A DNA stretch of 64,000 nt, taken from Macrostomum lignano (taxonomy: Eukaryota). The number at the start of each line of letters is the position of its first letter. The stretch's first letter is position 1. A program made the translations under genes and the position numbers. The notes below the pieces were generated by a model. It ran no database searches, was not told the origin of the DNA, and worked only from the letters and a program-made list of their open reading frames with translations. Positions 39,344 through 62,666 of this stretch are shown piece after piece. The stretch lies in the NCBI GenBank assembly GCA_002269645.1, contig NIVC01000697.1, positions 210,196-274,195 on the forward strand, written 5' to 3'.

Positions 39344-39606
39344 CGCCGGACAAAACTTTGCTTGGACAAAGGATGCAACAGAACACTCGCTAAGCTGTCT
39401 GGAGCAATGTCCTCGTCACCCTCATCTGCTTCTGCCACAGTTGCTGGTCGGCCAAATACAAAAATTCTGAAACAGAGACGCAACGCTGCGTTGTTTGTTG
39501 TTGAGACAGACGATGAAGCTACGGTAGCCAGTGGCTATCCAGACTCCTCCTCGGCGCCGGCTGCCGCTGCCGGCGGGAGGCGAAGCGGCCAGCGTTCGCG
39601 GAACGG
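39344..39606 (+). CDS. Candidate upstream exon of the Hv gene (RRTKLCLDKG...QRSRN)
   Basis: ttctag acceptor, open frame, GTGAGG donor; phase 2 matches exon 42885. Confidence 0.45.
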
Positions 39607-39681: not shown

Positions 39682-40324
<643 letters not shown>

Positions 40325-40816
40325 TGGGGATATAACTTGCATCAAGGATGTTGTCACGCAGAAATTATTTTAATAACTTCCCCTCCGAGTTAGACAACTG
40401 CGATTTGAGCTGCTTTGAGTCCCATATTAGGCAGGCAGACAGTATACATTATTTCGGAATAAGCACTTGTGCGTCGACACCTTTTATTAACCAGCCAGCA
40501 CGACTCGTGCTTCTCTCTACACCTAATTCGAATCTATTGGAACCATGTCCGCCCGGCTTTGCTAAGGTAATCAACTGGGATAAGTCATCATAATATTTTA
40601 ATAGAAATCAAAGGCCAGACCCGTAGAATCCAATTCTTCCCAAATATTTCTACACGGAGGGACAGGAACGGCTTTATAATGAACAGGTTGAACTATCTGG
40701 CGCGACATGGAGGCTGATAATTGAGAAATTGTGTGAGAGGCGGGCGCAATTCGCTTAAAATGTCTAACGTCAAACGCTGCTGTCTTCTTAGATTGAATCC
40801 ACTTCTGCATGGGCAG

Positions 40817-41381
40817 GTGGGATTGTCACTCTGATGAGCGTCTGAATGCACACCCACTACCTACATTCAGTCCAGGGATTGTCACTCTGATGAGCGTCTG
40901 AATGCACACCCACTACCTACATTCAGTCCAGGGATTGTCACTCTGATGAGCGTCAGAATGCACACCCACTACCTACATTCAGTCCAGGGATTGTCACTCT
41001 GATGAGCGTCAGAATGCACACCCACTACCTACATTCAGTCCAGGGATTGTCACTCTGATGAGCGTCAGAATGCACACCCACTACCTACATTCAGTCCAGG
41101 GATTGTCACTCTGATGAGCGTCTGAATGCACACCCACTACCTACATTCAGTCCAGGGATTGTCACTCTGATGAGCGTCTGAATGCACACCCACTACCTAC
41201 ATTCAGTCCAGGGATTGTCACTCTGATGAGCGTCTGAATGCACACCCACTACCTACATTCAGTCCAGGGATTGTCACTCTGATGAGCGTCAGAATGCACA
41301 CCCACTACCTACATTCAGTCCAGGGATTGTCACTCTGATGAGCGTCTGAATGCACACCCACTACTACCTACATTCAGTCCA
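40817..41381. repeat. 56-bp minisatellite, 10 copies
   Basis: Unit gggattgtcactctgatgagcgtctgaatgcacacccactacctacattcagtcca. Confidence 0.97.
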
Positions 41382-41591
41382 ATACACATTAATCATAAAT
41401 GGGTGTTTTTCTCCGTCACTGCAGTGAAGTACTTTAGCAAACTTAAGTTACCTCGGTCAGCAGCTGCCTGACAAACTTTGATTGTTAAAGAATCTCTGAC
41501 TTCATTGGCTTTTTCAAAGCTTTCTTTAGAAAGAAAAAAGGAACCAATGTAAATTTTAATGGGGTTAAAATATCTTGTTGGATAACTCCGG

Positions 41592-41964
41592 GGGGCCGTC
41601 TCCTAGTGGTCTGGTGCGGCGCTCTGATGCGCCAGCGGCCCAGGCTCGATTCCCAGTGCAGTAAACATTGATTTGGGACTAAATTGGAATCTCGGCTTGG
41701 CTCTGCTCGTGAAATTAACGCCCTTGAACTCGAAGGCCAACCCCCAAGGCACAGTGAAGTGTACATGCCTAACATCGATAAACTTAGGGCCGCTGTACAC
41801 TCCTGTGTGAGTGCGTGCCTGTGCGTATGACTGCGTACGTATCCGCGCGCTTGTGTTCCTGCTCAGGGGAGTCGGCGGAATGGGTAGTAATGCCTCTCGC
41901 CGGTTGTGTGACAATGTCGCTTAAAGTGCGCCAGGGTGCACACAGACCCTAACCACTAAAAAAA
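41592..41964 (+). mobile_element. tRNA-derived SINE, copy 2
   Basis: A-box-like TAGTGGTCTGG, B-box GGCTCGATTCCC, body homologous to 17060-17423, A-rich end. Confidence 0.85.
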
Positions 41965-42172
41965 CTGAATGATTCCTTTAAGGACTGCTGTAACGCCTGT
42001 TTTTTTACTAATTATTGTGTCGAAAAATTTCTAAATAGTTTTTTGCGGAAAGTACTATTTTGTGTATCGCCGGCTATTTATTGCAGCAAAATATTAATTT
42101 ACGCGCCTTGTCAGCGGGAACTGGCCGTGGCCGCGCTCCCCTTTGACCCGGGCAAGCGGACTGTCTGCGACT

Positions 42173-42193
42173 GAGCCAATGGGGGCGGGGGGC
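42173..42193 (+). promoter_or_regulatory. Adjacent CCAAT box and GC box (possible promoter)
   Basis: gagccaatgggggcgggggg in a GC-rich patch ~700 bp upstream of exon 42885. Confidence 0.25.
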
Positions 42194-42291
42194 AGAGAGG
42201 GGCACTTTGATTAGCGTCCCCCGACTCGAATCTGTTTTGGCAGACCACTCTGCCCACCCCGCCCCCTGGAGACGGGAGCATCGCTTTCAAG

Positions 42292-42339
<48 letters not shown>

Positions 42340-42884
42340 TCTGAAAGTGGACTCCACCGCTGAAGGAGGCGGGCCTACTGAAGCGTGCGCAAGGCCACCG
42401 AGGCTGTGGCTCAAACCCATTAATGACGATGAGGGACTCTACATAGCTTAGATATTGGTCTCTTATCCAACTAAAAATCCACATAGCGAGTCTCTGTCTC
42501 GACTGGAATTCTGAGAACCCGGGGTCTTCCAAATCCTCTTCGACCTGAGAGACTTAGCCGTCGGAAATACTTTTTTCTTACTTTCTTGTTAGGCCGTCAC
42601 TTTGGCCTGCTTTCCTATGCGCGGTTTCTCTTGCTAATAACTGTTATCTATGAATCAATAATTAGGGTATTAAGCTGATGTTGGACTCCAGCATCTACCA
42701 ATCGGAATCTGAGCATCTGTCAGCTCAAGCACGCCATGCTGAACCGCAACTACTGGTTACTTTATAATGTCACGATGACAATGAATGATAAATAAGTTCC
42801 TCTGCATCATTGCGCAGACTCAGTTGTGCTCGAACTAACACTATATTTACTTTACTTACTGTTACTTATTTTTACTAATTCCAG

Positions 42885-43010
42885 GTACTCCTACCAGTTC
42901 GGATGGATGAACAACAAGAAGTTTATCAAGCAGTTGCAGAAGGACAATATCGACTTGGCCATCCTACAGAGCGAAATCGGGGCTGTCAGCACCAAGCGGC
43001 GAAAGAAATC
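42885..43010 (+). CDS. Candidate N-terminal exon of the Hv gene (YSYQFGWMNNKKFIKQLQKDNIDLAILQSEIGAVSTKRRKKS)
   Basis: Strong pyrimidine tract plus ccag acceptor, coding-like codon usage, GTTAGT donor; phases fit 39606 and 47826. Confidence 0.6.
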
Positions 43011-43044
43011 GTTAGTGAAATGAGGTTTATTTGCAGCGTCCGTG

Positions 43045-44130
43045 TAGGTTTGTGTCAGACAGCTATGCATCAGTGCAGGTTTGTGTCAGACACCTATGAA
43101 TCAGTGTAGATTTGTGTCAGACATCTATGCATCAGTGTAGATTTGTGTCAGACATCTATGCATCGGTGCAGGTTTGTGTCAGACATCTATGCATCGGTGC
43201 AGGTTTGTGTCAGACACCTATGAATCAGTGCAGATTTGTGTCAGACATCTATGCATCAGTGTAGATTTGTGTCAGACAGCTATGCATAGGTGTAGATTTG
43301 TGTCAGACATCTATGAATCAGTGTAGATTTGTGTCAGACATCTATGAATCAGTGCAGATTTGTGTCAGACAGCTATGCATAGGTGTAGATTTGTGTCAGA
43401 CATCTATGAATCAGTGCAGATTTGTGTCAGACAGCTATGCATAGGTGTAGATTTGTGTCAGACATCTATGAATCAGTGCAGATTTGTGTCAGACATCTAT
43501 GCATCAGTGTAGATTTGTGTCAGACATCTATGCATCAGTGTAGATTTGTGTCAGACATCTATGCACCGGTGCAGATTTGTGTCAGACATCTATGAATCAG
43601 TGCAGATTTGTGTCAGACATCCATGCATCAGTGTAGATTTGTGTCAGACATCTGTGCATCAGTGCAGGTTTGTGTCAGACATCTATGCATCAGCATCAGT
43701 GTAGATTTGTGTCAGACATCTATGAATCAGTGCAGATTTGTGTCAGACATCTATGCATCAGTGTAGATTTGTGTCAGACATCTATGTATCAGTGTAGATT
43801 TGTGTCAGACATCTATGCATCAGTGTAGATTTGTGTCAGACATCTATGCATCGGTGCAGATTTGTGTCAGACACCTATGAATCAGTGCAGATTTGTGTCA
43901 GACATCCATGAATCAGTGCAGATTTGTGTCAGACATCTATGAATCAGTGCAGATTTGTGTCAGACATCCATGCATCAGTGTAGATTTGTGTCAGACATCT
44001 ATGAATCAGTGCAGATTTGTGTCAGACATCCATGCATCAGTGTAGATTTGTGTCAGACATCTATGCATCGGTGCAGATTTGTGTCAGACATCTATGAATC
44101 AGTGCAGATTTGTGTCAGACATCTGCCGTG
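43045..44130. repeat. 31-bp minisatellite, ~35 copies
   Basis: Unit gatttgtgtcagacatctatgcatcagtgta. Confidence 0.97.
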
Positions 44131-44439
44131 TAGATTTATGTCGGTCACTTTTCTGACCACAGCATGGCTTTGCAGGATGACTAAAAGATGAATTTGCATA
44201 GCTATCAATGTCGGAGAAACTTTTGTGGAGAAGTCAAAAGTTGGATTTTCAGGCGCTTTGCGTTGCGTAACAGCTTCAGCGCTAATGCGTTTGAATGGCT
44301 GGGCAAAGGGATTAAGCAGGACTGCCAGTGGGGCAGATAACCGCCTGTCGCTGTGTCTGCGTAATTTCCATGCAAATTTTATTTCAGTAAATTCGGGTTG
44401 TGCCAGACACGATATCGATTTGCGGATTGTTACATTGGC

Positions 44440-45545
44440 CCTTCCAGATCCTCTGTTGCTCGGCAGCCACCCTCCCAGATTCTCAGTTGCTGGGCAGACA
44501 CCCTCCCAGATTTTCAGTTGCTGGGCAGCCACCCTCCCAGATCCTCAGTTGCTGGGCAGACACCCTCCCAGATCCTCAGTTGCTGGGCAGACACCCTCCC
44601 AGATCCTCAGTTGCTGGGCAGCCACCCTCCCAGATTCTCTGTTGATCCTCAGTTGCTGGGCAGACACCCTCCCAGATCCTCAGTTGCTGGGCAGACACCC
44701 TCCCAGATTCTCAGTTGATCCTCAGTTGCTGGGCAGCCACCCTCCCAGATTCTCAGTTGATCCTCAGTTGCTGGGCAGACACCCTCCCAGATTCTCAGTT
44801 GATCCTCAGTTGCTGGGCAGACACCCTCCCAGATCCTCAGTTGCTGGGCAGACACCCTCCCAGATTCTCTGTTGATCCTCAGTTGCTGGGCAGACACCCT
44901 CCCAGATCCTCAGTTGCTGGACAGACACCCTCCCAGATTCTTTGTTGATCCTCAGTTGCTGGGCAGGCACCCTCCCAGATTCTCTGTTGATCCTCAGTTG
45001 CTGGGCAGCCACCCTCCCAGATCCTCGGTTGCTGCGCCATCACCAGCCTCCCAGATCATCGGTTGCTGGGCCATCACCAGCCTCCCGGATCCTCAGTTGC
45101 TGGGCAGCCACCCTCCCAGATTCTCAGTTGATCCTCAGTTGCTGGGCAGACACCCTCCCAGATTCTCAGTTGATCCTCAGTTGCTGGGCAGACACCCTCC
45201 CAGATCCTCAGTTGCTGGGCAGACACCCTCCCAGATTCTCTGTTGATCCTCAGTTGCTGGGCAGACACCCTCCCAGATCCTCAGTTGCTGGACAGACACC
45301 CTCCCAGATTCTTTGTTGATCCTCAGTTGCTGGGCAGGCACCCTCCCAGATTCTCTGTTGATCCTCAGTTGCTGGGCAGCCACCCTCCCAGATCCTCGGT
45401 TGCTGCGCCATCACCAGCCTCCCAGATCATCGGTTGCTGGGCCATCACCAGCCTCCCGGATTCTCAGTTGCTGGGCAGCCACCCTCCCAGATCCTCGGTT
45501 GCTGGGCCATCACCAGCCTCCCAGATCCTCGGTTGCTGGGCCATC
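44440..45545. repeat. 31/42-bp minisatellite with a 371-bp higher-order duplication
   Basis: Unit gatcctcagttgctgggcagacaccctccca; identical track ORFs 44806-45012 and 45177-45383 are offset by 371 bp. Confidence 0.95.
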
Positions 45546-46649
45546 GCCATACCAGATCCTTTAGCTTTAGTTTGGCTACTCCAAATGCACTCTTTGTACT
45601 CACAGTGTACTTCAACTCTGAGCTGAGAGAAAGCGAGATGAAAGTAAGATAAAATGAAGACGAGCAAAGGCAGTAACTGAGCAGGAGCCTGTACTCGCAG
45701 AAAGTTAATTAGTGAATTTAATTATCACAATATTTCAAGTGCTGGCAGATACTAATTCCCGACTCCTCCTTGATGGGGATTGCAAAAGGGCCAAGCCCAG
45801 GGATTCTCTGTGGAATGCACCATCAACACTATGGAATCATTAACGTTGACTAGACAGCAGCAATTCGCAGCATGGCATCCTTTAGATGCTACTGCTATTA
45901 GTAAAACTAGCCAATGCTTTCTAGCGGGAGTATTTTCTAGAATCACTTTATTCACACAGTTTTGGCTACTTTCAGTAGTATTTTGGCTATTCAGATGTGT
46001 CAGAATTGGACAGCACGACATCTGTAATTTTTTTACCATCGTCCTTTCCAGCCGCTTTTGTCACCTGTTGAGAGAGTCCGCAGGGGATTGACTCACCTGT
46101 GAAAATTTGAAGTTGATGCTTCGCTTTAAAGCTACAGCAGTGGAGACGAACTCAATTCCTTGAGTTCTTATTCTTGATGGCAGCTGGGAAAAGCCTGGCG
46201 GATTAAAAATCTGAGTCAATTTGAGTTCTAGCCGAGCAGCTGTCTGCAGATTATCAACTCGGTGGGACGGGGATTTGCTGAGGCCATCTTCATTTCATGG
46301 GGATGCAGGAGGCACCGATCAGGGCCGGTGCGGGGGCGGCTGTCACGGCGGGGCAGCGTGCTGCCGCTGCTGCTATAGGGACTTTAGGCCTGCTCAAGCT
46401 CTCATCTACATGTAAAGCCGAAGGAGGAATTTCTTCTGGGTGCTTTCAGAGATAAGTTCTGCTTTTCTTGACGCCTTAGACTGGTGCACCGCATATTTTA
46501 TGGCATTCTTCATGTCCTACAGGATCTAGAGTCGAAGGCAAGCCGAGAAACACTTTGGGGGCATTGAGCAACTTACTTAAAACGAGTCAAAAGCCAAGCT
46601 CTCTCAAGCAACTCCTGTCCGTCTCTTTTTTCAACTCTTTACCCCCCTC

Positions 46650-47525
46650 CCCAAATCCATCGCAATGTACACACACACGGACCCTCCAAATCAATCTTAA
46701 TGTACACACACTCTGACCCTCCAAATCAATCTTAATGTACACACACTCTGACCCTCCAAATCAATCTTAATGTACACACACTCTGACCCTCCAAATCAAT
46801 CTTAATGTACACACTCTCTGACCCTCCAAATCAATCGCAATGTACACACTCTCTGACCCTCCAAATCAATCTTAATGTACACACTCTCTGACCCTACAAA
46901 TCCATCGCAATGTACACACTCTCTGACCCTCCAAATCAATCTTAATGTACACACTCTCTGACCCTCCAAATCAATCTTAATGTACACACTCTCTGACCCT
47001 ACAAATCCATCGCAATGTACACACTCTCTGACCCTCCAAATCAATCTCAATGTACACACACTCTGACCCTCCAAATCCATCTCAATGTACACACTCTCTG
47101 ACCCTCCAAATCAATCTTAATGTACACACACTCTGACCCTCCAAATCAATCTTAATGTACACACACACGGACCCTCCAAAACCATCGCAATGTACACACA
47201 TTCTGACCCTCCAAATCCATCGCAATGTACACACACACTGACCCTCCGAATCCATCGCAATGTACACACACACGGACCCTCCAAATCAATCTCAATGTAC
47301 ACACACTCTGACCCTCCAAATCAATCTCAATGTACACACTCTCTGACCCTCCGAATCCATCGCAATGTACACACTCTCTGACCCTCCAAATCAATCTTAA
47401 TGTACACACTCTCTGACCCTCCAAATCAATCTTAATGTACACACACTCTGACCCTCCAAATCCATCGCAATGTACACACACTCTGACCCTCCAAATCCAT
47501 CGCAATGTACACACACACGGACCCT
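46650..47525. repeat. 35-bp minisatellite
   Basis: Unit ctgaccctccaaatcaatcttaatgtacacactct. Confidence 0.95.
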
Positions 47526-47825
47526 CGAAAATAACCCCACTTCATTTCAATGTAAGCACACAATACCCTTCAAAACAATCTGAGCCCATCACAACAGACA
47601 GGCTCACGAATTCTTCTCCTCAAAACTCTAGCACAGAAAGTTGCATTAATATTGATATTTCATTGTCATCATGTCCGCATTTTGCTGCCACTCTCCCTGC
47701 TTCTCTCCGCCGAGAGCTCCCATTCGCTGTCGAATCATAAATAAGCATAACTTGGGATAACCCTGCGGCAGGTCGGGCATATAGAATAAGAAGGTTTAAA
47801 CTCTATCAGTAGCATTTGCCCCGAG

Positions 47826-48106
47826 CATTGAGGTGATGTCAGAGCCCAGCTCTCAGCTCAGCCTGTTGCCAGGCAGCTGGCGTCATCAGCGAGACTCGCC
47901 TCCCATTGATGAGGAGGAAATTTACCAGAGAAGTCGCGGCCCCAGCTCTAAGAATCCGCATTCCGTTCGGGCCCGTTACAGGTGGCGCGAACGGCTGCTG
48001 CACGTGATCCGGTCCAATGCTGCGCAGATCATCCTGTGCGCTCTGGTGCTCATCGATGCGGTCATTGTCATAGCTGAGATCATCCTGGAGATCAAGGCCA
48101 TCACCA
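47826..48106 (+). CDS. HVCN1: Voltage-gated proton channel exon: S0-S1
   Basis: RWRERLLHVIRSNAAQIILCALVLIDAVIVIAEIILE aligns with Hv1 S1 (LVVLDALLVLAELILD); selectivity Asp codon at 48055-48057; GTGAGT donor; 5' boundary uncertain. Confidence 0.9.
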
Positions 48107-48174
48107 GTGAGTTCTTCGCGGACTGGGGCGCGGGATGAGCCTGGTCTGGCTCAGTGATTTGTTTGTGCTAACCG

Positions 48175-48850
48175 ATAGATGAAGGAATAGAGTGGGTTGC
48201 TAATCTAGCCAACATCATGATTGATGAAGGAATAGAATGGATTACTAATCTAGCCAACATTATGATTGATGAAGGAATAGAATGGATTGCTAATCTAACC
48301 AACATCATGATTAATGAAGGAATAAATGGATTGCTAATCTAGCCAACATCATGATTGATGAAGGAATGGAATGGATTGCTAATCTAGCCAACATTATGAT
48401 TGATGAAGGAATAGAATGGATTACTAATCTAGCCAACATTATGATTGATGAAGGAATAAATAGATAGCTAATCTAGCCAACATCATGATTGATGAAGGAA
48501 TGGAATGGATTGCTAATCTAGCCAACATCATGATTGATGAAGGAATGGAATGGATTGCTAATCTAGCCTGCATCATGATTGATGAAGGAATGGAATGGAT
48601 TGCTAATCTAGCCTGTATCATGATTGGTGAAGGAATGGAATGGATTGCTAATCTAGCCTGCATCATGATTGATGAAGGAATGGAATGGATTGCTAATCTA
48701 GCCTGCATCATGATTGATGAAGGAATAAATGGATTGCTAATCTAGCCAACATCATGATTGATGAAGGAATAAATGGATTGCTAATCTAGCCTACATCATG
48801 GATGCAGGAATAGAGTGGATTGCTAATCTAGCCAAAATCACGGATGAAAG
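48175..48850. repeat. 45-bp minisatellite
   Basis: Unit gatgaaggaatggaatggattgctaatctagccaacatcatgatt. Confidence 0.95.
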
Positions 48851-49725
48851 AATAGATTGAATTGCTGCTTAATACCAGTAAAGAAGAATCAGAATCATAT
48901 TTCCATACATTTGAAGTCAGAAGCCATTAGAAAATGTCTCTTGACAAGCTGACCGCTAAATGCCGCCCATCCTGGCAACACAACTCATAACTGCCTTTCC
49001 TTGCTTTCTTACTCGCCAAAGAGTGGATCAGCCCTTCACTGTCACTGAGTGCATGTCGCCAGGTCATTCATTACGGCCAGAAGTGCACCCGCTGAATCCC
49101 CTGGAATCCCAGCACTCCCGGAGTCGTCCATCATCTGCGAATTGTCGCTTTGTATTTTTGCACCCTAAGATTCTTCAAGTTGGCCTCGCACAATGCGGCA
49201 GAGCCACAGTTTCCACTTTCGCTATAAAATAATATACGCATCCTATAGTTATGATTGACAGTTCGAGTTTGGGCAGAAAATCTAAAAAACCGCACCATAC
49301 TTGGGATAGAGAGTTCGGTTCGAATGGGGTATTGGTATTTCTATGAAATCAATTATAAAGGTAATTATTATCTTAGATTTGTTATAGCTGGATAAATAAT
49401 AAGGCAGGCAGTGGAGGGAAATGGAAAAGTGAACGGAGAATTATTGATGGAATGAATTGACCTTCTAATGGACTGGCACACAAGGAGTTCAGAATCTATG
49501 CTCATATTGGGAAGCATTGGTGCAGACAATTAGTTGTCTAGCAGAAGCAAAGTTGCGACAAAAGAGGCCAATAGTTGCTAGCAGTCCGGGAAAGGTGAGT
49601 AGTCAGACTGCAAAGAAACAAAACAAAAAGCTTTTGTGGCTTTTGTAGCGTGAGTACGCTCGTACTCAAAACAAAAGCACTTCGTTGGTCCTACTGGATT
49701 GCCTGCTTTTAGAAGGCTTTTGCCA

Positions 49726-50277
49726 CCTGAATGGATTAGTGATGTGTCAGTCCAAATGGTTCAACCATGGACCTGAATGGATTAGTGATGTGTCAGTCCA
49801 AATGGTTCAACCATGGACCTGAATGGATTAGTGATGTGTCAGTCCAAATGGTTCAACCATGGACCTGAATGGATTAGTGATGTGTCAGTCCAAATGGTTC
49901 AACCATGGACCTGAATGGATTAGTGATGTGTCAGTCCAAATGGTTCAACCATGGACCTGAATGGATTAGTGATGTGTCAGTCCAAATGGTTCAACCATGG
50001 ACCTGAATGGATTAGTGATGTGTCAGTCCAAATGGTTCAACCATGGACCTGAATGGATTAGTGATGTGTCAGTCCAAATGGTTCAACCATGGACCTGAAT
50101 GGATTAGTGATGTGTCAGTCCAAATGGTTCAACCATGGACCTGAATGGATTAGTGATGTGTCAGTCCAAATGGTTCAACCATGGACCTGAATGGATTAGT
50201 GATGTGTCAGTCCAAATGGTTCAACCATGGACCTGAATGGATTAGTGATGTGTCAGTCCAAATGGTTCAACCATGGA
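49726..50277. repeat. 46-bp minisatellite, 12 apparently identical copies
   Basis: Unit cctgaatggattagtgatgtgtcagtccaaatggttcaaccatgga. Confidence 0.97.
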
Positions 50278-50349
50278 CGACTTTATTCAAGCAGCTGGAC
50301 TGGAGTCTACTCGTAATCTAGGATTCCACATGGTTCAACAAAAACTCAG

Positions 50350-50740
50350 ATTCCGAATCCCAACTCAGATCCCGAATCCCAACTCAGATCCCGAATCCCA
50401 ACTTAGATCCCAAATCCCAGCTCCGATGCGGAATCCCAACCCAGATCCCGAATCCCAACTCAGATCCCGAATCCCAACTCAGATCCCGAATCCCAACTCA
50501 GATCTCGAATCCCAACTCAGATCCAAAATCCCAGCTCCGATGCGGAATCCCAACCCAGATCCCGAATCCCAACTCAGATCCCGAATCCCAACTCAGATCC
50601 CGAATCCCAACTCAGATCTCGAATCCCAACTCAGATCCAAAATCCCAGCTCCGATGCGGAATCCCAACTCAGATCCCGAATCCAAATTGAGATTCCATTA
50701 CAAACACAAAATTCTATATCCGATCCCAGATCCCAACTCA
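50350..50740. repeat. ~19-bp repeat with 114-bp higher-order structure
   Basis: ccgaatcccaactcagatc units. Confidence 0.9.
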
Positions 50741-50774
50741 AATTAAATCCCTTCTCAAACAACCCTTGCGACAG

Positions 50775-51364
50775 GCGAGAAGGTGGCCCTGGAAGGCGCC
50801 TTCGTCAAGACCGCCAGCTTCGTGAACGAGACCTTCGCAAACTGCCTGTCGGAGCGCGGCCTGCTGCTGCCCGAGTTCACCCAGCGCCTGCTCTCGTCGC
50901 CGCAGTTTGCAGAGCGCCTGGCCTCCAGCATGCTGAACATCCTGCTGGCCCTCGGCGGCCACAACTCCAGCTCGGTGTGCAACGTCACAGGGGTCGCCAC
51001 GGCGGTGGCTTCGGCGGGCTCCGCGGCTGCGTCCTCCTCGCCGGCGGCGGCGGCAGCGGCTGCTCGTTCGTCAACAGCTGGACGACCGGCGTCGGCAACT
51101 GCCGCTGGACTCCGGTTGAGACGGGCGGCAAGCGGGGGCGGCAGCAGCGGAGGCGGCGGCGGCGGAGGCGGCAGCAGTGGAGGCGGCGGCGGCGGAGTTC
51201 GAATATTCAGCAGCTACCAGCAGGATTACAGCCACGCGAAGCTGCTGCACGACGTGTCCTCGGTGCTGCACTACGTCAGCATCGGCATTCTGGGCCTGTT
51301 CGTGCTGGAGGTGGCACTGAAAGTTGCCTGCTTGGGACGGAACTTCGTGAGGGAAAAATTTGAG
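50775..51364 (+). CDS. HVCN1: Hv exon: long S1-S2 loop plus S2
   Basis: Ends VSSVLHYVSIGILGLFVLEVALKVACLGRNFVREKFE, matching Hv1 S2 ([22 protein letters not shown]...HHKFE); cag acceptor, GTAAAG donor; phases 1 and 0 consistent. Confidence 0.92.
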
Positions 51365-51419
51365 GTAAAGTTTTACTTGTCTGTTAGAATTTTAGCTCAC
51401 TAGAGAGGACTGGGGAATA

Positions 51420-51615
51420 GCAGGGAGAGCAGACAGGGAAACAGCACGGAGACAGGATGTGGGGAGGGGAACAGACAGGGAAACAGCACGGAGACAGGAT
51501 GTGGGGAGGGGAACAGACAGGGAAACAGCACGGAGACAGGATGTGGGGAGGGGAACAGACAGGGAAACAGCACGGAGACAGGATGTGGGGAGGGGAACAG
51601 ACAGGGAAACAGCAT
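51420..51615. repeat. 42-bp minisatellite
   Basis: Unit gggaacagacagggaaacagcacggagacaggatgtggggag. Confidence 0.95.
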
Positions 51616-52149
51616 TTAATTTGGCCAAATTAAGCTTCCCGAGGAAAGGTATGCGGAAAATCAAAAGAACATTTAGTGAAAAAAGACTAGCTAGGACTAA
51701 AAGTCTTTTATGACTGACTGTATGGAAACAAGGTTCAAGGTGGCCAGGGGGGTGTTTTGGCAGGAAGTGCGTGCAGGCGCAAACAGGGGGGCTGTCGGTC
51801 ATGGAAGACGAGCAGGGAAATTCCATTCTGCCCAGTCTGGTCCGGGAAGGGGAGGGGTACAGAGAGACAGAGAGGAGCGGCGTAAGAATGCCGAAAGTAA
51901 AAGTAATGATAACAGGGCCTTGGACACGGACCTGTGCCGTGCGTGTGCCAAGGAGTGGCCTTGAGAGATAGAAAGCACTCGGAATTCTACAGGGGTGATG
52001 TGGACCCCGGGGCTAGTGAAACAGGATATTCATACTTGCGGAGCCAAGTTGGGGTGGCGGCATGTTCCAGCGAATATTTCTGCTGGGACCACCCACCCCG
52101 CGATGCTGAGGTACTAATTACTGACTGATTGTGTGATTGTGGCTGCATG

Positions 52150-52375
52150 AATCAGCACTGAGTGTGTGATTGTGCCTGCGGGACTCAGCACTGAGTGAGT
52201 GAGATTGTGGCTGCGGGACTCAGCACTGAGTGAGTGAGATTGTGGCTGCGGGACTCAGCACTGAGTGAGTGAGATTGTGGCTGCGGGACTCAGCACTGAG
52301 TGTGTGATTGTGGCTGCGGGACTCAGCACTGAGTGTGTGATTGTGGCTGCGGGACTCAGCACTGTGTGTGACTGA
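52150..52375. repeat. 35-bp minisatellite
   Basis: Unit gattgtggctgcgggactcagcactgagtgagtga. Confidence 0.93.
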
Positions 52376-52428
52376 GAGACAGACTGCAAAAGAGATTTAC
52401 GACCCAATGTGACTGTACACCCGCGCAG

Positions 52429-52552
52429 ATCGTGGACGCCACAGTGATCCTGATCTCATTCGTGGCAGACATCGTGTTCGTGAAGCTGGAATCCACAGAG
52501 GTGTCTGTCATGGTTCTGTTCCTGCTGTGGCGCATTGTCCGCGTCATCAATG
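52429..52552 (+). CDS. HVCN1: Hv exon: S3-S4
   Basis: IVDATVILISFVADIVFVKLESTEVSVMVLFLLWRIVRVING versus Hv1 ILDAVVVVVSFILDIV...LLILLRLWRVARIING. Confidence 0.95.
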
Positions 52553-53471
52553 GTGAGTTATAGCCAGTCTCCTAATTAAATTAATGGGCATCACTAGTTT
52601 GGGAAAGATATTGTCTTTTTGCCAATGAAATTCAAATTCAGACATGAAGACTTTTTTTCTAAAATTGAATTTTCAATATTGCTTTTGATTAATTGAAAAA
52701 GGCTTTTTAACGACTTTTTGGTAGGGTTGTTCGCTAATTGCTTTCAGAAACTCAATGTGATTAATTTTATTGCTGCGGAATATTGCTGCGTATTTATACT
52801 GTACACACGCTCACTCAGGGTGTACATCGGCCCTGGCTTTCTAATCGGCAGACATGTACACTGTCTGTGCCTTGAGGGTTGGCGCTTGATCGGGAAGAAC
52901 GGGTTTGTAAGCATGCAGCGTTAGAGCTTAGGAACTTTTCGCAATGCCAAAAAGAAGATTCGTTTTGGTCAGCCATCCGCTATAACTGGAGGCAGAGGCC
53001 CGAACTTGCCAATGCATTTCACGAGTATTTGTTTGCCTTTTCCCGTGACTGACTGGCACCTGCGCGCCAGGTGCGGCAGTGCCTGCAAGCCTCTCCGGCC
53101 CTCCTGCTGTGGGATGCAATTTCAGCTGGAAACTGCGGGGATTACAAGCGGGCTCAGGTGTTAATTTGTAATCGGCGAGCTGAAATAACTGCATTCTACA
53201 AGCTATCACAGCTTATTAATGGCGTACACACTGTAGTAGTGCATGCCAAGTAGTTCTCCCCTGGTTTTATACTGTTAATTACACGGTTCGCTTGTACCAA
53301 AGTGATTGGGTGCGAGGCTGCACTTTTCATGGATGCGGCAGTTTCCAGCTGGGCTTGCGCGAGTTTTAGGGCTTCCGTGTAAAGCCAAGTTTAATTTTGC
53401 GGCTTGTGCACGAAAATTGGCCGAAGGCTGTACATGCCGTACTATGGGAGGAGTCTGGGCTGTACACCCTG

Positions 53472-55054
53472 CAGGGACGTCGCCACCGGGGGGACATGTC
53501 CCCCCCCCAGTAAAAGCTATGGGGGGACATGCCAATGCTTTGTCCCCCCCCACCCCACCTTGTTGACCCGTTATGGAAATCAATAATTTTGCTTCAGGGC
53601 GACAAAACATAGCGCCTGCGGTGCCAAAATGAGCGCCTGCGGTGCCAAAATGAGTACCTGCGGTGCCAAAATGAGCGCCTGCGGTGCCAAAATGTGTGGC
53701 CAAAATGAGCGCCTGCGGTGCCAAAATGAGCGCCTGCGGCACCAAAATGAGCGCCTGCGGTGCCAAAATGAGCGCCTGCGGCACCAAAATGAGCGCCTGC
53801 GGTGCCAAAATGAGCGCCTGCGGCACCAAAATGAGCGCCTGCGGTGCCAAAATGAGTGGCCAAAATGAGTACCTGCGGTGCCAAAATGAGCGCCTGCGGC
53901 ACCAAAATGAGCGCCTGCGGTGCCAAAATGAGTACCTGCGGTGCCAAAATGAGCGCCTGCGGTGCCAAAATGTGTGGCCAAAATGAGCGCCTGCGGTGCC
54001 AAAATGAGCGCCTGCGGCACCAAAATGAGCGCCTGCGGTGCCAAAATGAGCGCCTGCGGCACCAAAATGAGCGCCTGCGGTGCCAAAATGAGTGGCCAAA
54101 ATGAGTACCTGCGGTGCCAAAATGAGCGCCTGCGGCACCAAAATGAGCGCCTGCGGTGCCAAAATAAGTACCTGCGGTGCCAAAATGAGCGCCTGCGGTG
54201 CCAAAATGTGTGGCCAAAATGAGCGCCTGCGGTGCCAAAATGAGCGCCTGCGGCACCAAAATGAGCGCCTGCGGTGCCAAAATGAGCGCCTGCGGCACCA
54301 AAATGAGCGCCTGCGGTGCCAAAATGAGTGGCCAAAATGAGTACCTGCGGTGCCAAAATGAGCGCCTGCGGCACCAAAATGAGCGCCTGCGGTGCCAAAA
54401 TGAGTACCTGCGGTGCCAAAATGAGTACCTGAGGTGCCAAAATGAGCGCCTGCGGCACCAAAATGAGCGCCTGCGGTGCCAAAATAAGTGTCTGCGGCGC
54501 TAAAATGAGTGCCTGCGGTGCCAAAATGTGTGGCCAAAATGAGTACCTGAGGTGCCAAAATGAGCGCCTGCGGCACCAAAATGAGCGCCTGCGGTGCCAA
54601 AATAAGTGTCTGCGGCGCTAAAATGAGTGCCTGCGGTGCTAAAATGAGTGTCTGTGGCGCTAAAATGAGTGCCTGTGGCGCCAAAATGAGTGCCTGCGGC
54701 GCCAAAATGAGTGTCTGCGGCGCTAAAATGAGTGCCTGCGGCGCCAAAATGAGTACCTGCAGCGCCAAAATGAGTGGCCAAAATGAGTACCTGCGGCGCC
54801 AAAATGAGCGCCTGCGGCACCAAAATGAGCGCCTACGGTGCCAAAATAAGTGTCTGCGGCGCTAAAATGGTGCCTGTGGCGCCAAAATGAGGGCCTGCGG
54901 CGCCAAAATGAGTGTCTGCGGCGCTAAAATGATCGATGACAACACCGATTTGGAAATAAGTACATGTACAATAGGAATTTTGTCATGTACATGTACATGT
55001 AGAAGTCTGGGCTTTGTCCCATCCCCCACCATAAAATCCATGGCGATGTCCCTG
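53472..55054. mobile_element. TIR element (CAGGG ends) carrying a 21-bp minisatellite
   Basis: cagggacgtcgcca (53472) and tggcgatgtccctg (55054), 14 bp with 1 mismatch; subterminal gggggacatgtccccc palindrome; no clear TSD. Confidence 0.7.
53610..54930. repeat. 21-bp minisatellite, ~60 copies
   Basis: Unit gcgcctgcggtgccaaaatga with periodic short variants. Confidence 0.97.
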
Positions 55055-55167
55055 ACTGTGTGAGCGCCTGCGTACAGTATCAGGGGTCGCATGGATGTGG
55101 TACCTGGTATAGCAACATAATCGTGACAGTGACGCTCACACAAAGCCGCTTTGGTCGCCCCTGACAG

Positions 55168-55283
55168 GCCTGATGATGCACGAGAAGCAGAGGGACGAAT
55201 TTCGAATTCAACTGCAGAAGCGAGCCCGGCGAATGTCCGAGATGAAGTGCGACACCCTGGAGACAGAGCGCGACCTTCAAGAG
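55168..55283 (+). CDS. HVCN1: Hv exon: post-S4 coiled coil (GLMMHEKQRDEFRIQLQKRARRMSEMKCDTLETERDLQE)
   Basis: Phase-1 acceptor completes ING-G; charged helical sequence; GTTTGT donor. Confidence 0.85.
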
Positions 55284-55839
55284 GTTTGTTTGTTTGCTGA
55301 AAAACAATTTGTTTGTTTCTTTTAGCAATGAATTGATAATATGTCACTTTTTAGACTACCGAATTGCGACTGAAGCACGCGCGCAGGCTTATTTCAAGGA
55401 CTACGTTTCTTGAACAATTTAGAAGGCAGGTTTTACTGAAATAATACATTACGGAGCTTTGGAGTTTTCATTTTATCAGCACAGAAGGCAGACCCAATGC
55501 TCATCTTATCCTACGCATCAAAAGCAACTACAATTTTTGTGCTGAAAAAATGAAAACCTCCTATCTCCGTAATGTACTTTTTAGGTAAAAACTGCCTCCT
55601 AGAAATTTTCCAAGAAACGTATAGTTTCCGGTCGTTCTAGCTGAGTAGTTCTTGGTTTATGTCATTAAAAAAATTTCGATTAAAAGCACTAATTAGAGTT
55701 TTGCCCGAACTTTGCTTTCTCATCAAAAAACATGACTAGTCAAAAAAGTCAAAAAAGTTCTTGTTTAGTTCTCAAACTTGAGAGAGATAATTTGACAATA
55801 AGATTCACTTCAGCCTAACCCTACACCGGATTACCGCAG

Positions 55840-55918
55840 AAGCAGATCCTGTTCCTGGAGGAGCTCTGCCGCGAGCTCGGCGGAAGCGAAGATCAAATCG
55901 GCAACTGCAAGCCGCGGT
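55840..55918 (+). CDS. HVCN1: Hv exon: end of coiled coil (KQILFLEELCRELGGSEDQIGNCKPR)
   Basis: ccgcag acceptor, GTGAGT donor, phase-consistent; resembles the EI..L..LL..HG coiled-coil end of Hv1. Confidence 0.85.
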
Positions 55919-56415
55919 GTGAGTTGCTCTGACTGCTAAATTGCTCCAATTAATCTCTTAGACAGTCGGCTCTCACCAATTGCTAAATTAACAAAAGCAT
56001 TACGACCAACGCGTTGGTTAAAAGCTTGGAAGCAGACTTGTTGCCTACTAGATTTCTTGTGCTTTTTTGTGAGCAAGCAATGCAGATGGAGCAGTTATAG
56101 AGGAAAAGAGATCGAAGCTGCTTATTAGCCAATTCCCAAATGAAAGCGTAGAGGCGGCTGGCTTTTTCATCATTGCCGAAAAAAGGGGCTAAAAACAGGT
56201 TCTTGATGCAACTGATGCAGCAGCCCACTCAGGGCTGGAAACTGCGCGGAGGAAGGCGCATTACTAGCAAATGCTGGCTGCATCTTTTTGTCTAAGCACA
56301 GCTTTTTTTATGCAGGTATTATTACCTGACATCAAATTTGTCGGAGTGAGAACGTATGGGAACCAATCAGGGATAGGTGTAGAATGAAATTGTTAAAAGA
56401 CTGCACTGTTCCTTT

Positions 56416-56912
56416 GGCTCTCTGACACCCACCGATCACACACATCACTCAGCTGTCCATGCAGCTCCGATGGCTCTGACACCCACCGATCACACACATC
56501 ACTCAGCTGTCCATGCAGCTCCGATGCCTCTGACACCCACCGATCACACACATCACTCAGCTGTCCATGCAGCTCCGATGCCTCTGACACCCACCGATCA
56601 CACACATCACTCAGCTGTCCATGCAACTCCGATGCCTCTGACACCCACCGATCACACACATCACTCAGCTGTCCATGCAACTCCGATGCCTCTGACACCC
56701 ACCGATCACACACATCACTCAGCTGTCCATGCAACTCCGATGGCTCTGACACCCACCGATCACACACATCACTCAGCTGTCCATGCAGCTCCGATGGCTC
56801 TGACACCCACCGATCACACACATCACTCAGCTGTCCATGCAGCTCCAATGGCTCTGACACCCACCGATCACACACATCACTCAGCTGTCCATGCAACTCC
56901 GAAGGCTCTGAC
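56416..56912. repeat. 54-bp minisatellite, ~9 copies
   Basis: Unit ctctgacacccaccgatcacacacatcactcagctgtccatgcagctccgatgg. Confidence 0.96.
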
Positions 56913-56960
56913 ATCACCAACCCATACGCCCACAAGACTTGCTGTTTTGTACAACTTCAG

Positions 56961-57499
56961 CGCCTCATTACAAAAGCAACAAATCCATCACCGCCCCCGC
57001 AGTCGTGAACATCAGCAAGCGACAGTCGAACAACGCTTTGAAGTCGATGGCGGCCATGTCGGCCGGAATTTTCGGCGGCATCGCTGGCGCCCAGCACCGA
57101 AGGTCGCTCAGCGTGCTGACCAGCAATTTGGGCAGCGGCACCCCGCCGACCACCTCCCGCCAGTCGTCAGGCCTCGACACCATCGCCGAGGACGCGGACT
57201 CGGCCCGGCCGTCCGCCGGCCAGCTCGACGAAGGCGTCGCTTTAGCCGACGACGACGGGTTAACGACGAATTCGAATGAAGATTCGGAGCCTCCGTCGTT
57301 TCTGCTGAACGGGCAGCCCAGTCAGCAGCAGCAGAACGATGAAGCCGTCACCCCCGACCCTCAGGAGCAGCCGCCGAAGCCTCCGAGGCCACAGCGACCC
57401 CGCCGGTTGCAGCCGACATCCCCGGTAGCGAGCAGAGGGAATCGGCTGGATGCGGATGATGACGCAGCAGCTCAGGAGGAGAACCCGTGGGAGCTCAGG
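56961..57499 (+). CDS. HVCN1: Hv exon: extended cytoplasmic C-terminal tail
   Basis: cttcag acceptor in phase 1, 179-codon GC-rich frame (SPHYKSNKS...NNALKSMAAMSAGIFGGIAG...EENPWELR), GTGAGA donor. Confidence 0.75.
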
Positions 57500-57679
57500 G
57501 TGAGAACTTGAGCAGTCAATCAAGCATCTTGCTATTCAATTTGTGCTATCGGACTTTTAACTTGCTTTTTTTCTTAGCGCATGTACTTTATTTGCCGTTA
57601 ATAGCTTCTTAAAACAAATCAATTACTTTAAATTACTTAGTCTAATCAGGGACCATAAAAAGTACATGCTTGCTAGGAC

Positions 57680-62037: not shown

Positions 62038-62116
62038 CTGCGCACAATTTATTTAATCCCAAACAGTAATTAGCCAGATCGAAAAGTCACCAAAATAGAG
62101 AGACTGTCCAAACTAC

Positions 62117-62666
62117 TCCAGCACTTCCGCGCGCTTCTGCGCCACGCGCTCCTGGCGCCGCTTCCTGGCCTCTCTGGCGCGGGTCCGCCTGGCCTCGGCC
62201 TGGTCCATGAGCTGCTTAGTGCGAGCCCGCTCCGCCTTCTTCCTGTGGATGTGCTCAACCAGCACGCGCTTGTTCTTGAACCCGTTGCCCTTGCAGCTCA
62301 TGTACAGCTGGTGGTACAGGTGCTTGTCGAGCTTCTTAGCCTCGCGGTAGCGCTTGAGCAGGCGGCGAAGCACGCGCATGCGGCGCATCCAGAGCACCTT
62401 CTCGGCATGCGCGCGTTAGCCGTGCCCTTGCGCTTGCCCTGGCCCATGTGGCGGCCCTTGCGCCTGGCGATCAGGTTCTTGCGGCAGCGGGCACGCGAGT
62501 GGACAGCAACCGGCTTGCGGATGATCAGGCCGTCCTTGACCAGCTTGCGAATGTTCTGCGACTGTTGGCATTGGCGATCTCGCTGTTCTCGTTGGGATCC
62601 AGCCAGATCTTGGCTTTGCCGCACTTCAGCACGGCAGCGGCAAGCCGCTTTTGCAGGCGCAGGTTG
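62117..62666 (-). CDS. RPL19: 60S ribosomal protein L19 (eL19) main exon, two 1-bp deletions (~62557, ~62403)
   Basis: [26 protein letters not shown]...[29 protein letters not shown]...[36 protein letters not shown]...[11 protein letters not shown]; cacag acceptor at 62667. Confidence 0.95.

What the first reader, a model, noticed from the sequence alone, without database searches (positions are those of the whole stretch)
52510..52552. Proton-channel S4 has only two arginines (LxWRxxR instead of RxWRxxR)
Seen: S4 reads VLFL-L-W-R-I-V-R-VIN; the first gating Arg position (human R205) is Leu (CTG, 52522-52524), while the S1 Asp, S2 His/Phe/Glu/Lys, both S3 Asp, the Trp and the Asn are retained; the S3-S4 His (H193) is absent. 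Established, from recall: a molluscan Hv3 paralogue with Leu at this position shows closed-state proton leak. Inference: a low-gating-charge or leaky proton channel in a non-molluscan-looking genome, possibly extending that subfamily. Caveat: CTG is one base from CGG (Arg).
Basis: partly seen in the sequence, partly recalled or inferred. Interest (0 to 1): 0.78.

Follow-up and report, generated by a model that had tools for sequence, protein, structure and literature searches.

The report
Flatworm proton-channel gene lacking first arginine
This is an intact flatworm (Macrostomum) gene for a voltage-gated proton-channel relative whose voltage sensor naturally has two arginines instead of three; it belongs to an old, already noticed invertebrate branch of that family, of which only one member (from a sea slug) has been tested.

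Summary
Exon 52429-52552 (+) encodes S3-S4 of an Hv-type voltage sensor. CTG 52522-52524 (Leu) sits where human Hv1 has R205. The S1 Asp, the S2 His/Phe/Glu/Lys, both S3 Asp, the Trp, R2, R3 and the Asn are all kept.

It is not a sequencing error. The same Leu occurs in four other Macrostomum lignano protein models and in every close homologue recovered: cestodes, trematodes, a monogenean, an annelid, a brachiopod and a bryozoan. A nemertean has Ile and a bivalve Val.

I rebuilt the gene as 8 exons (39407-57511, 636 aa). It has a ~160-aa glycosylatable S1-S2 loop and a ~250-aa tail after S4. These are the hallmarks of the 'unconventional' Hv3-type channels described in Lophotrochozoa in 2022-2023.

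In a neighbour-joining tree all R1-less sequences, including Aplysia AcHv3, form one clade. Bootstrap is 0.86, or 0.67-0.70 without the S4 motif columns.

The gene lacks the Pro of the molluscan LPWR motif and does not match TMEM266 at that protein's diagnostic positions.

Function is inferred, not shown: a proton-selective channel with reduced gating charge and possibly closed-state leak. The inference rests on AcHv3 and on human R205W.

Verdict: a real new member of a known kind, of moderate interest.

The parts
39407..39606 (+). Exon 1: start codon and N-terminal 66 aa (MSSSPSS...RRSGQRSRN + first two bases of Gly67). Donor is GG|gtgagg, phase 2.
   Evidence: Sequence read. The spliced product aligns continuously across this junction with the M. 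lignano paralogue fragment P0182 (62% identity over 92 aa, E 1e-36). This is the least certain exon, because no transcript data were available.
42885..43010 (+). Exon 2: conserved cytoplasmic N-terminal motif YSYQFGWMNNKKFIKQLQKDNIDLAILQSE...KRRKKS.
   Evidence: tblastn matches to the cestode N-termini and to P0182. AG/GT splice sites and phases. The motif is conserved across the clade (A2).
47982..48106 (+). Exon 3: S1 helix (48019-48093), with the selectivity-filter Asp (GAT 48055-48057, Asp134) and Glu residues at the human E119 and D123 positions.
   Evidence: Acceptor ttacag|G, donor CCA|gtgagt.
50775..51364 (+). Exon 4: ~160-aa extracellular S1-S2 loop plus the S2 helix (51263-51334). 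The loop carries three N-x-S/T sequons (50825-33, 50963-71, 50981-89) and Ala/Gly/Ser low-complexity sequence. S2 carries His, Phe, Glu and Lys at the human H140, F150, E153 and K157 positions.
   Evidence: Loop length compared with relatives. The AF2 model shows helices at the start of the loop and a disordered middle.
52429..52552 (+). Exon 5: S3 (52429-52482, Asp at the D174 and D185 positions) and S4 (52501-52551).
52522..52524 (+). CTG = Leu379 at the first gating-charge position (human R205). It is followed by Leu380, Trp381, Arg382 (R2), Arg385 (R3) and Asn388.
   Evidence: Conserved as Leu, Val or Ile in all 84 R1-less relatives tabulated.
55168..55283 (+). Exon 6: post-S4 helix LMMHEKQRDEFRIQLQKRARRMSEMK..., the start of the predicted coiled coil. 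The motif is conserved in the clade.
   Evidence: AF2 predicts one continuous helix from S4 at pLDDT 93-95.
55840..55918 (+). Exon 7: end of the coiled coil and the conserved C-K/R-P motif (…IGNCKPR).
56961..57511 (+). Exon 8: ~180-aa C-terminal tail and the stop codon. It holds the conserved hydrophobic motif NNALKSMAAMSAGIFGGIAGA, followed by acidic and Pro-rich sequence that looks disordered.
   Evidence: The motif is shared with flatworm, annelid, bryozoan, brachiopod and mollusc relatives.

Best explanation
What it is. The window holds an intact 8-exon gene (39407-57511, + strand, 636 aa) of Macrostomum lignano or a very close relative. [quoted passage not shown]

Shown here:
- The protein is a pore-less S1-S4 voltage sensor.
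- It keeps the Hv selectivity-filter Asp in S1.
- It keeps the charge-transfer Phe/Glu/Asp and the S4 Trp-Arg-x-x-Arg-x-x-Asn.
- It carries Leu at the outermost gating-charge position.
- It has a ~160-aa extracellular S1-S2 loop with three N-glycosylation sequons.
- S4 is predicted to run straight into a coiled coil.
- A ~250-aa tail follows S4.
- The Leu is the ancestral state of its clade, not a lesion of this gene.

Inferred mechanism:
- The protein probably dimerises through the coiled coil.
- Each subunit probably conducts protons through its own voltage sensor, with Asp134 pairing with Arg382 or Arg385.
- Only two S4 charges cross the field, so gating charge should be about one third lower than in Hv1.
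- Voltage dependence should be shallower and activation faster.
- In the resting state no R1-Asp salt bridge seals the outer vestibule. R2 can then reach the Asp across the hydrophobic gasket, giving a proton-selective leak as in AcHv3 and human R205W.
- Loss of the S3-S4 His should weaken Zn2+ block.
For: Identity as an Hv-type sensor:
- The best solved-structure sequence hits are human and mouse Hv1 (E 2e-12 and 1e-10), with all signature residues in register.
- Pfam Ion_trans matches only the S2-S4 part of the profile (positions 27-109 of 241).

Gene integrity: seven AG/GT introns, consistent phases, no internal stop.

Conservation of the Leu:
- Four other M. lignano models carry it.
- So does every named flatworm homologue recovered: Hymenolepis, Taenia, Mesocestoides, Rodentolepis, Spirometra, Sparganum (two paralogues), Clonorchis, Fasciola, Calicophoron, Heterobilharzia, Schistosoma and Cichlidogyrus.
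- So do Owenia (annelid), Lingula (brachiopod) and Bugula (bryozoan). Tubulanus (nemertean) has Ile and Dreissena (bivalve) has Val.

Subfamily membership:
- R1-less sequences have S1-S2 loops of median 127-138 aa (minimum 82) and post-S4 tails of median 214-325 aa.
- Conventional RxWRxxR sequences give ~5 aa on the same loop measure and ~75 aa for the tail.
- The window protein has 158 and 248 aa.
- In the NJ tree of 99-102 sensor cores, all 53-54 R1-less sequences, including AcHv3 (P0062 = Aplysia XP_005094274, 980 aa, L429-P430-W431), form one clade with bootstrap 0.855. The 12 flatworm sequences are monophyletic at 1.0.
- Clade-specific motifs lie outside the sensor: N-terminal KDNID..IL..E, post-S4 KQRxEFRIxLQKRARR, C-K/R-P, and a hydrophobic C-terminal motif.

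Functional precedent:
- AcHv3 is proton-selective, with leak and weak voltage dependence (PMC10911540).
- Human R205W, which has no proline, leaks in the closed state, activates faster and has weaker voltage dependence. Its authors describe its currents as comparable to AcHv3 (PMC11853527).
- R205A lowers z-delta from 0.90 to 0.57 (PMC10377628).

Structure: the AF2 model has TM helices at pLDDT ~90 and S4 continuous with a long helix.
Against: - There are no functional data for this protein or for any Pro-less member of the clade.
- The authors of the AcHv3 work attribute part of that channel's behaviour to the Pro next to the Trp, and this gene lacks that Pro.
- Leu has not been tested at R205. 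R205A still gates.
- Several clade members have lost other classical residues. The E153 position is Gln, Thr or Cys in cestodes and trematodes. The Trp is Leu in the monogenean. R2 is Gln in P0024 and P0114. The clade may therefore not be held to classical proton-channel gating.
- Clade support falls to 0.67-0.70 without the S4 motif columns, and the clade is not recovered from S1-S3 alone. The tree is a simple NJ tree.
- Expression of the gene and exon 1 are not confirmed by transcripts.
- Foldseek against the PDB gave no significant match.
Confidence: 0.6

Rival explanations
1. It is a non-conducting voltage-sensor protein. It would work like vertebrate TMEM266/HVRP1, sensing voltage or Zn2+ and signalling through its long cytoplasmic tail without passing protons.
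For: - Like TMEM266, it has a coiled coil followed by ~250 residues of seemingly disordered tail (PMC6392501).
- NCBI's pipeline names some isoforms of the close Lingula relative 'transmembrane protein 266'. The review supplement lists that gene as a 'C15orf27 homolog'.
- Some clade members have lost E153, the Trp or R2.
Against: - The TMEM266 diagnostic residues are not present. TMEM266 has Val at the filter position, Met at D185, three S4 Arg plus K213, and D217. This protein has Asp134, Asp at the D185 position, two Arg and Asn388.
- The only tested member of its clade, AcHv3, conducts protons selectively.
- No TMEM266 sequence could be placed in the tree.
Confidence: 0.2
2. It is a normally gating proton channel. 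On this view Leu at R1 is functionally silent, because R2 and R3, and perhaps nearby basic residues, suffice. The channel would open only on depolarisation and extrude acid like Hv1.
For: - All other Hv signature residues are present.
- R205A in human Hv1 still gates with voltage.
- The Pro thought to distort S4 in AcHv3 is absent.
Against: - Every reported neutralisation of R1 changes gating: a lower slope in R205A, faster activation and a negative shift in R1Q, and leak in R205W.
- No compensating basic residue is in register upstream of Leu379. The S3-S4 stretch reads KLESTEVSVMVLFLLW.
Confidence: 0.15
3. It is an artefact or a dead gene: a base-call error (CGG read as CTG) or a decaying paralogue in a duplicated, repeat-rich genome.
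For: - CTG is one substitution away from CGG.
- The M. lignano genome has several copies of this gene (P0001, P0007, P0157, P0179, P0182).
- The older model P0001 carries obvious frameshift errors in S4.
Against: - Leu is conserved at this position across at least four phyla and in all other M. lignano copies.
- The 636-codon reading frame is intact, with canonical splice sites.
- The sensor is 92-100% identical between copies while the loops diverge.
Confidence: 0.02

Closest known systems
Aplysia californica AcHv3 (XP_005094274; Chaves et al. 2022, PMC10911540), the only characterised Hv3-type channel
   Same: - R1 is replaced by Leu, while S1 Asp, Trp, R2, R3 and Asn are kept.
- It has a very long S1-S2 loop and a long C-terminal domain after a coiled coil.
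- It falls in the same R1-less clade in my tree.
   Different: - AcHv3 has LPWR, with Pro before the Trp. The window gene has LLWR.
- The AcHv3 loop is 299 aa and its tail 535 aa, against ~160 and ~250 aa here.
- Core identity is only ~27%.
- AcHv3 lacks the KQRxEFRIxLQKRARR post-S4 motif in its flatworm form.
Large-loop, Pro-less Hv channels of annelids, bryozoans, nemerteans and brachiopods (PMC10377628 section 2.1.4 and supplement: Eisenia GIUK01058977, Dendrobeania GJXY01243660, Lingula LOC106155662)
   Same: - They share the S4 type (F/I-L-L/M-W-R-x-x-R-x-x-N), the long S1-S2 loop and the long tail.
- They share the N-terminal D-x-x-D..I..E motif, the post-S4 KxRxxFRIxxQKRxR motif, C-K-P and the hydrophobic C-terminal motif.
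- They are the nearest non-flatworm relatives.
   Different: - They come from other phyla, and core identity is ~32-43% (A1).
- The flatworm genes form their own clade with bootstrap 0.93-1.0. In neodermatans that clade has duplicated.
- None of these channels has been tested functionally.
Human Hv1 (HVCN1) and its R205 mutants
   Same: - The sensor architecture and all key residues except R1 are shared.
- R205W is a single-residue mimic, with R1 replaced by a hydrophobic residue and no Pro. It gives leak, fast activation and weak voltage dependence.
   Different: - Hv1 has RLWRVAR.
- Its S1-S2 loop is about 10-15 residues, and the protein ends at the coiled coil.
- It has His193 for Zn2+ binding.
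Schistosoma haematobium Hv channels XM_012937229 and XM_012937230, the flatworm Hv printed in the 2023 review's supplement
   Same: They come from the same phylum and are Hv-family sensors.
   Different: - They are a different lineage, with a short S1-S2 loop and an elongated S3-S4 loop.
- R1 is present (YRLWYIK... and FRLWRVIF...).
- They fall outside the R1-less clade in my tree.
TMEM266 / HVRP1 (C15orf27)
   Same: A pore-less sensor, a coiled coil and a ~250-aa disordered tail. The S2 His and S1 Glu of the Zn2+ site are kept.
   Different: TMEM266 has Val at the filter position, Met at D185, three Arg plus K213 and D217, and no proton current. The window protein has Asp, Asp, two Arg and Asn.

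Membership tests
Voltage-gated proton channel (Hv) family | An S1-S4 voltage-sensor domain with no S5-S6 pore domain. | tested here: met
   The gene model encodes four TM helices and then a coiled coil. Pfam Ion_trans matches only profile positions 27-109 of 241. The best PDB sequence hits are human and mouse Hv1.
Voltage-gated proton channel (Hv) family | An acidic selectivity-filter residue in mid-S1 (human D112). | tested here: met
   Asp134, GAT 48055-48057, aligned to D112.
Voltage-gated proton channel (Hv) family | The S4 signature RxWRxxR. | tested here: not met
   The motif is LLWRIVR. R1 is Leu379, while Trp, R2 and R3 are present. The same departure defines the Hv3-type branch, whose one tested member is still a proton channel.
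Voltage-gated proton channel (Hv) family | Charge-transfer and counter-charge residues (F150, E153, D174, D185, K157) and N214. | tested here: met
   All are present at the aligned positions.
Voltage-gated proton channel (Hv) family | Voltage- and pH-gradient-dependent, proton-selective conductance. | not testable with these tools
   This needs patch-clamp recording of the expressed protein.
Unconventional / Hv3-type Hv channels (Chaves et al. 2022, 2023) | The first S4 arginine is missing. | tested here: met
   Leu379.
Unconventional / Hv3-type Hv channels (Chaves et al. 2022, 2023) | A proline directly before the S4 tryptophan (xPWRxxR), as in molluscs, brachiopods and phoronids. | tested here: not met
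   Leu380 occupies that position. The review states that the annelid, bryozoan and nemertean large-loop channels also lack the Pro.
Unconventional / Hv3-type Hv channels (Chaves et al. 2022, 2023) | [quoted passage not shown] | tested here: met
   The loop is ~158 aa by the same measure that gives ~5 aa for conventional Hv. It carries three N-x-S/T sequons.
Unconventional / Hv3-type Hv channels (Chaves et al. 2022, 2023) | A large intracellular domain beyond the coiled coil. | tested here: met
   248 aa follow S4, against a median of 75 in conventional Hv.
Unconventional / Hv3-type Hv channels (Chaves et al. 2022, 2023) | Phylogenetic grouping with AcHv3 rather than with conventional Hv1, Hv2 or Hv4. 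| tested here: met
   The R1-less clade has NJ bootstrap 0.855, or 0.67-0.70 without the S4 motif columns. It is not recovered from S1-S3 alone. Support is moderate and an ML tree is still needed.
Unconventional / Hv3-type Hv channels (Chaves et al. 2022, 2023) | Proton-selective leak and weak voltage dependence. | not testable with these tools
   Known only for AcHv3.
TMEM266 / HVRP1 | A non-polar residue (Val111) at the Hv selectivity-filter position and Met at the D185 position. | tested here: not met
   Asp occupies both positions.
TMEM266 / HVRP1 | S4 with three Arg (RxxRxxR) plus an extra Lys, followed in register by an Asp. | tested here: not met
   There are two Arg, no extra Lys, and Asn at the in-register position.
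TMEM266 / HVRP1 | Orthology in a tree. | not tested

The most novel reading that the evidence does not exclude
The Leu-for-R1 sensor may be the founding character of a spiralian Hv lineage more than 500 million years old. On my evidence that lineage spans flatworms, annelids, nemerteans, bryozoans, brachiopods and molluscs. The Pro-less flatworm form would then show that loss of R1 alone, without the molluscan Pro, makes a stable and selectable two-charge proton pathway with shallow voltage dependence or standing leak. In that case these are physiological proton-leak or inward proton channels rather than acid extruders. Because one or two copies are present in Schistosoma, Fasciola, Clonorchis, Echinococcus-type cestodes and Taenia, they would be an unexplored class of parasite membrane proteins with a large, lineage-specific extracellular loop.
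Probability: 0.4. Interest if true: 0.55.

Novelty: new member of a known kind. Interest (0 to 1): 0.4.

Why it matters
- It gives a natural Pro-less counterpart to AcHv3, in Macrostomum lignano. That separates the effect of losing R1 from the effect of the S4 proline, a question the AcHv3 authors left open.
- It places flatworms, including major human and livestock parasites, in the R1-less Hv lineage. It also shows that flatworms carry this lineage alongside the R1-bearing Hv genes already listed for Schistosoma.
- It corrects the public gene models for this locus, which are truncated or frameshifted.
- It does not reveal a new kind of protein.

Tried and rejected
Searches and submissions that led nowhere:
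- The word-indexed homology searches were swamped by low-complexity loop words. One search gave 2 hits and one search gave 13, several of them fragments. The exhaustive representative search supplied the usable set.
- Foldseek of the AF2 model against the PDB gave no significant match. The best E was 0.75, although the top hits were all voltage-sensor proteins. It adds nothing beyond the sequence match.
I used the near-identical UniProt model P0157 instead, so the N-terminal motif and the C-terminal tail were not modelled.

Ideas rejected:
- Sequencing error or pseudogene: rejected on conservation and an intact reading frame.
- TMEM266 identity: rejected on four diagnostic positions.
- My own interim idea that flatworms have only R1-less Hv genes: rejected. 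The review supplement shows two Schistosoma Hv genes with R1, and these fall outside the clade.
- The ATG at 47836 used by UniProt model P0157 as the start codon: rejected. Exons 1-2 upstream encode motifs conserved in cestodes and in paralogue P0182, and they splice in phase.
- P0001's N-terminal match at 46235-46425: treated as a spurious prediction.

Left unresolved: which of the two neodermatan paralogue groups the Macrostomum gene belongs to (bootstrap 0.41).

Full report
**Observation**

The stretch 52510-52551 reads ATG GTT CTG TTC CTG CTG TGG CGC ATT GTC CGC GTC ATC AAT, which translates to MVLFLLWRIVRVIN. It lies in an exon bounded by cag|ATC at 52429 and AATG|gtgagt at 52552.

I searched the S2-S4 translation against all PDB sequences. 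Human Hv1 (5oqk, E 2.2e-12) and the mouse Hv1 chimera (3wkv, E 1.4e-10) came out well ahead of calcium-channel and phosphatase sensors. The alignment puts 'lfllwrivrving' on 'llrlwrvariing'. So CTG 52522-52524 is the R205 position, with Trp, R208, R211 and N214 in register.

- S1 Asp at 48055-57.
- S2 His, Phe, Glu and Lys at 51269-71, 51299-301, 51308-10 and 51320-22.
- S3 Asp at 52435-37 and 52468-70.
- No His in the S3-S4 loop.

**Source organism and gene model**

The closest database proteins are Macrostomum lignano models at 94-100% identity, so the window is from that flatworm or a very near relative.

The public models are poor:
- P0001 has frameshifts inside S4.
- P0157 starts at an ATG that I place in an intron, and it reads through a donor site at its end.

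I used cestode homologues and a fragment of an M. lignano paralogue (P0182) as guides, and rebuilt eight exons on the + strand: 39407-39606, 42885-43010, 47982-48106, 50775-51364, 52429-52552, 55168-55283, 55840-55918 and 56961-57511. All seven introns are GT...AG, all phases agree, and the product is 636 aa with no internal stop. Exon 1 rests only on homology to P0182 across the junction and is the least certain.

In this numbering the filter Asp is 134, the Leu is 379, Trp 381, R2 382, R3 385 and Asn 388.

**Is the Leu real?**

Four other M. lignano models carry the same Leu. One of them (P0179) is a diverged paralogue with a different loop.

An exhaustive HMMER search of 1.84 billion representative proteins gave 841 hits. 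Among the 150 best, three S4 types appear:
- Conventional L-R-L-W-R-x-x-R.
- L-L-P-W-R-x-x-R, the AcHv3 type.
- L-x-W-R-x-x-R without Pro.

The third type fills the top of the list. The sequences I could name are cestodes, trematodes, a monogenean, the annelid Owenia, the nemertean Tubulanus (Ile), the brachiopod Lingula, the bryozoan Bugula and the bivalve Dreissena (Val). A base-call error or a private mutation is excluded.

**What family it belongs to**

Across the hit set, losing R1 goes together with two other features:
- S1-S2 loop: median 127-138 aa (minimum 82) in R1-less sequences, against about 5 aa on the same measure in conventional sequences.
- Post-S4 tail: median 214-325 aa in R1-less sequences, against 75 aa in conventional sequences.
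- The window protein has 158 and 248 aa.

These are the characters by which Chaves and colleagues define 'unconventional' Hv3-type channels. Their review says such channels, without the S4 Pro, exist in annelids, bryozoans and nemerteans (PMC10377628 section 2.1.4).

P0062 in my set is Aplysia XP_005094274. It is 980 aa long with L429-P430-W431, which matches the published description of AcHv3.

I built a neighbour-joining tree of 99 sensor cores (148 columns, 200 bootstraps). All 53 R1-less sequences fall on one side with support 0.855. The 12 flatworm sequences form a clade at 1.0.

The tree was then extended with the review's Eisenia large-loop channel and its two printed Schistosoma channels. 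Eisenia falls inside the R1-less clade. The two Schistosoma genes keep R1, have a long S3-S4 loop instead of a long S1-S2 loop, and fall outside it. Flatworms therefore carry both lineages. The one in this window is not the one the review illustrates for the phylum.

The clade support is only moderate. It is 0.695 without the R1 and Pro columns and 0.665 without the whole S4 motif. The clade is not recovered from S1-S3 alone.

Independent characters outside the sensor support the grouping:
- An N-terminal KDNID..IL..E motif.
- A post-S4 KQRxEFRIxLQKRARR motif.
- A C-K/R-P motif at the end of the coiled coil.
- A hydrophobic motif about 80 residues after S4.

**TMEM266**

The automatic name given to some Lingula isoforms raised the question of TMEM266. 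Published TMEM266 features are Val at the filter position, Met at the D185 position, three S4 Arg plus K213, D217 in register after them, and no proton current. The window protein has Asp, Asp, two Arg and Asn. It shares only the coiled coil and the long tail. I could not obtain a TMEM266 sequence to place in the tree.

**Structure**

I ran AlphaFold2 on P0157 with a 36-sequence alignment. P0157 is identical to the window protein in S2-S4 and has one conservative difference in S1. The result:
- Mean pLDDT is 72.6, with the TM helices near 90.
- S4 is continuous with a 68-residue helix at pLDDT 93-95, which fits a coiled coil.
- S1 continues as a helix about 27 residues beyond the membrane.
- Two more short helices follow in the proximal loop.
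- The Ala/Gly/Ser-rich middle of the loop is disordered.

Foldseek against the PDB gave no significant hit.

**How it most likely works**

Shown: the protein is an Hv-type sensor with the filter Asp and two of the three gating arginines. Its loop has three N-glycosylation sequons, consistent with an extracellular position.

Inferred: proton-selective conduction through each subunit of a coiled-coil dimer, with lower gating charge, shallower voltage dependence, faster activation, weaker Zn2+ block and perhaps closed-state leak.

The inference rests on three results:
- AcHv3 behaves this way.
- Human R205W has no Pro, leaks when closed, and is described by its authors as comparable to AcHv3. Their explanation is that without the R1-D112 bridge, R2 reaches D112 across the hydrophobic gasket.
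- R205A lowers z-delta from 0.90 to 0.57.

Against it:
- No Pro-less member of the clade has been tested.
- Leu has not been tried at R205.
- Some clade members have lost E153, the Trp or R2. That leaves room for a sensor-only role.

**Novelty and verdict**

The gene is real, intact and correctly read by the first stage. It is a new, undescribed flatworm member of a known branch of the Hv family that is functionally almost unexplored.

The subfamily had already been extended beyond molluscs in the literature. The finding therefore adds a phylum and a convenient Pro-less test case rather than a new kind of channel. Interest is moderate (0.4).

Noticed in passing
window 43042-44124, 44439-45560, 46651-47530, 48174-48866, 49725-50278, 50343-50683, 51422-51614, 52124-52370, 53611-54932, 56420-56913: Intron 1 was only partly scanned (from 42000), and the scanned part gave no array. 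Each of the other six introns holds at least one minisatellite array of its own. The periods are 31, 31/42/73, 35, 45, 46, 19, 42, 33, 21/42 and 54 bp, with up to 35 copies at 80-100% identity. These arrays produce many long spurious ORFs in the six-frame list.
   Followed up: partly
window 2157-5613 (+): Non-LTR retrotransposon ORFs: an endonuclease (Exo_endo_phos_2, E 1e-19), followed by reverse transcriptase (RVT_1, E 5e-37) and RNase H (E 1e-9). The reading frames appear intact.
   Followed up: partly
window 62113-62397 (-): An ORF matching the C-terminal domain of ribosomal protein L19e (PF25476, E 3e-18). It is presumably the last exon of an RPL19 gene on the opposite strand, downstream of the Hv gene.
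   Followed up: partly
window 56961-57100 (exon 8) and 55900-55918 (end of exon 7); relatives in A2: Two motifs outside the sensor are conserved from flatworms to molluscs in the R1-less clade. One is C-K/R-P at the end of the coiled coil. The other is a Ser/Ala/Gly-rich hydrophobic stretch about 80 residues after S4 (NNALKSMAAMSAGIFGGIAGA here). The second could be a membrane-associated helix. I found neither described in the papers I read.
   Followed up: partly
proteins P0024 and P0114 (unnamed sources) and P0016 (Cichlidogyrus casuarinus): Some relatives go further than this gene. P0024 and P0114 read LLLWQIVR, so R1 and R2 are both gone and one Arg is left. The monogenean P0016 reads LLFLRVLR, with the signature Trp replaced by Leu.
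   Followed up: no
protein P0026 (Lineus longissimus, nemertean): This nemertean protein carries the LLPWR motif. The 2023 review states that the S4 Pro is confined to molluscs, brachiopods and phoronids.
   Followed up: no
window 47833-47981 and 55919-55930; UniProt A0A1I8IXJ9 (P0157) and A0A1I8F401 (P0001): The public M. lignano models of this gene family look mis-built. P0157 starts at an ATG that I place in intron 2 and ends by reading into intron 7 (…CKPRCELL). P0001 has compensating frameshifts that turn WRIVR into CAHCR.
   Followed up: yes
cestode and trematode relatives (P0003, P0008, P0011, P0017) in the core alignment: The S2 Glu at the human E153 position is kept in Macrostomum. 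It is Gln, Thr or Cys in the neodermatan paralogues. The cestode S1-S2 loops are Cys-rich and unrelated in sequence to the Macrostomum loop.
   Followed up: no
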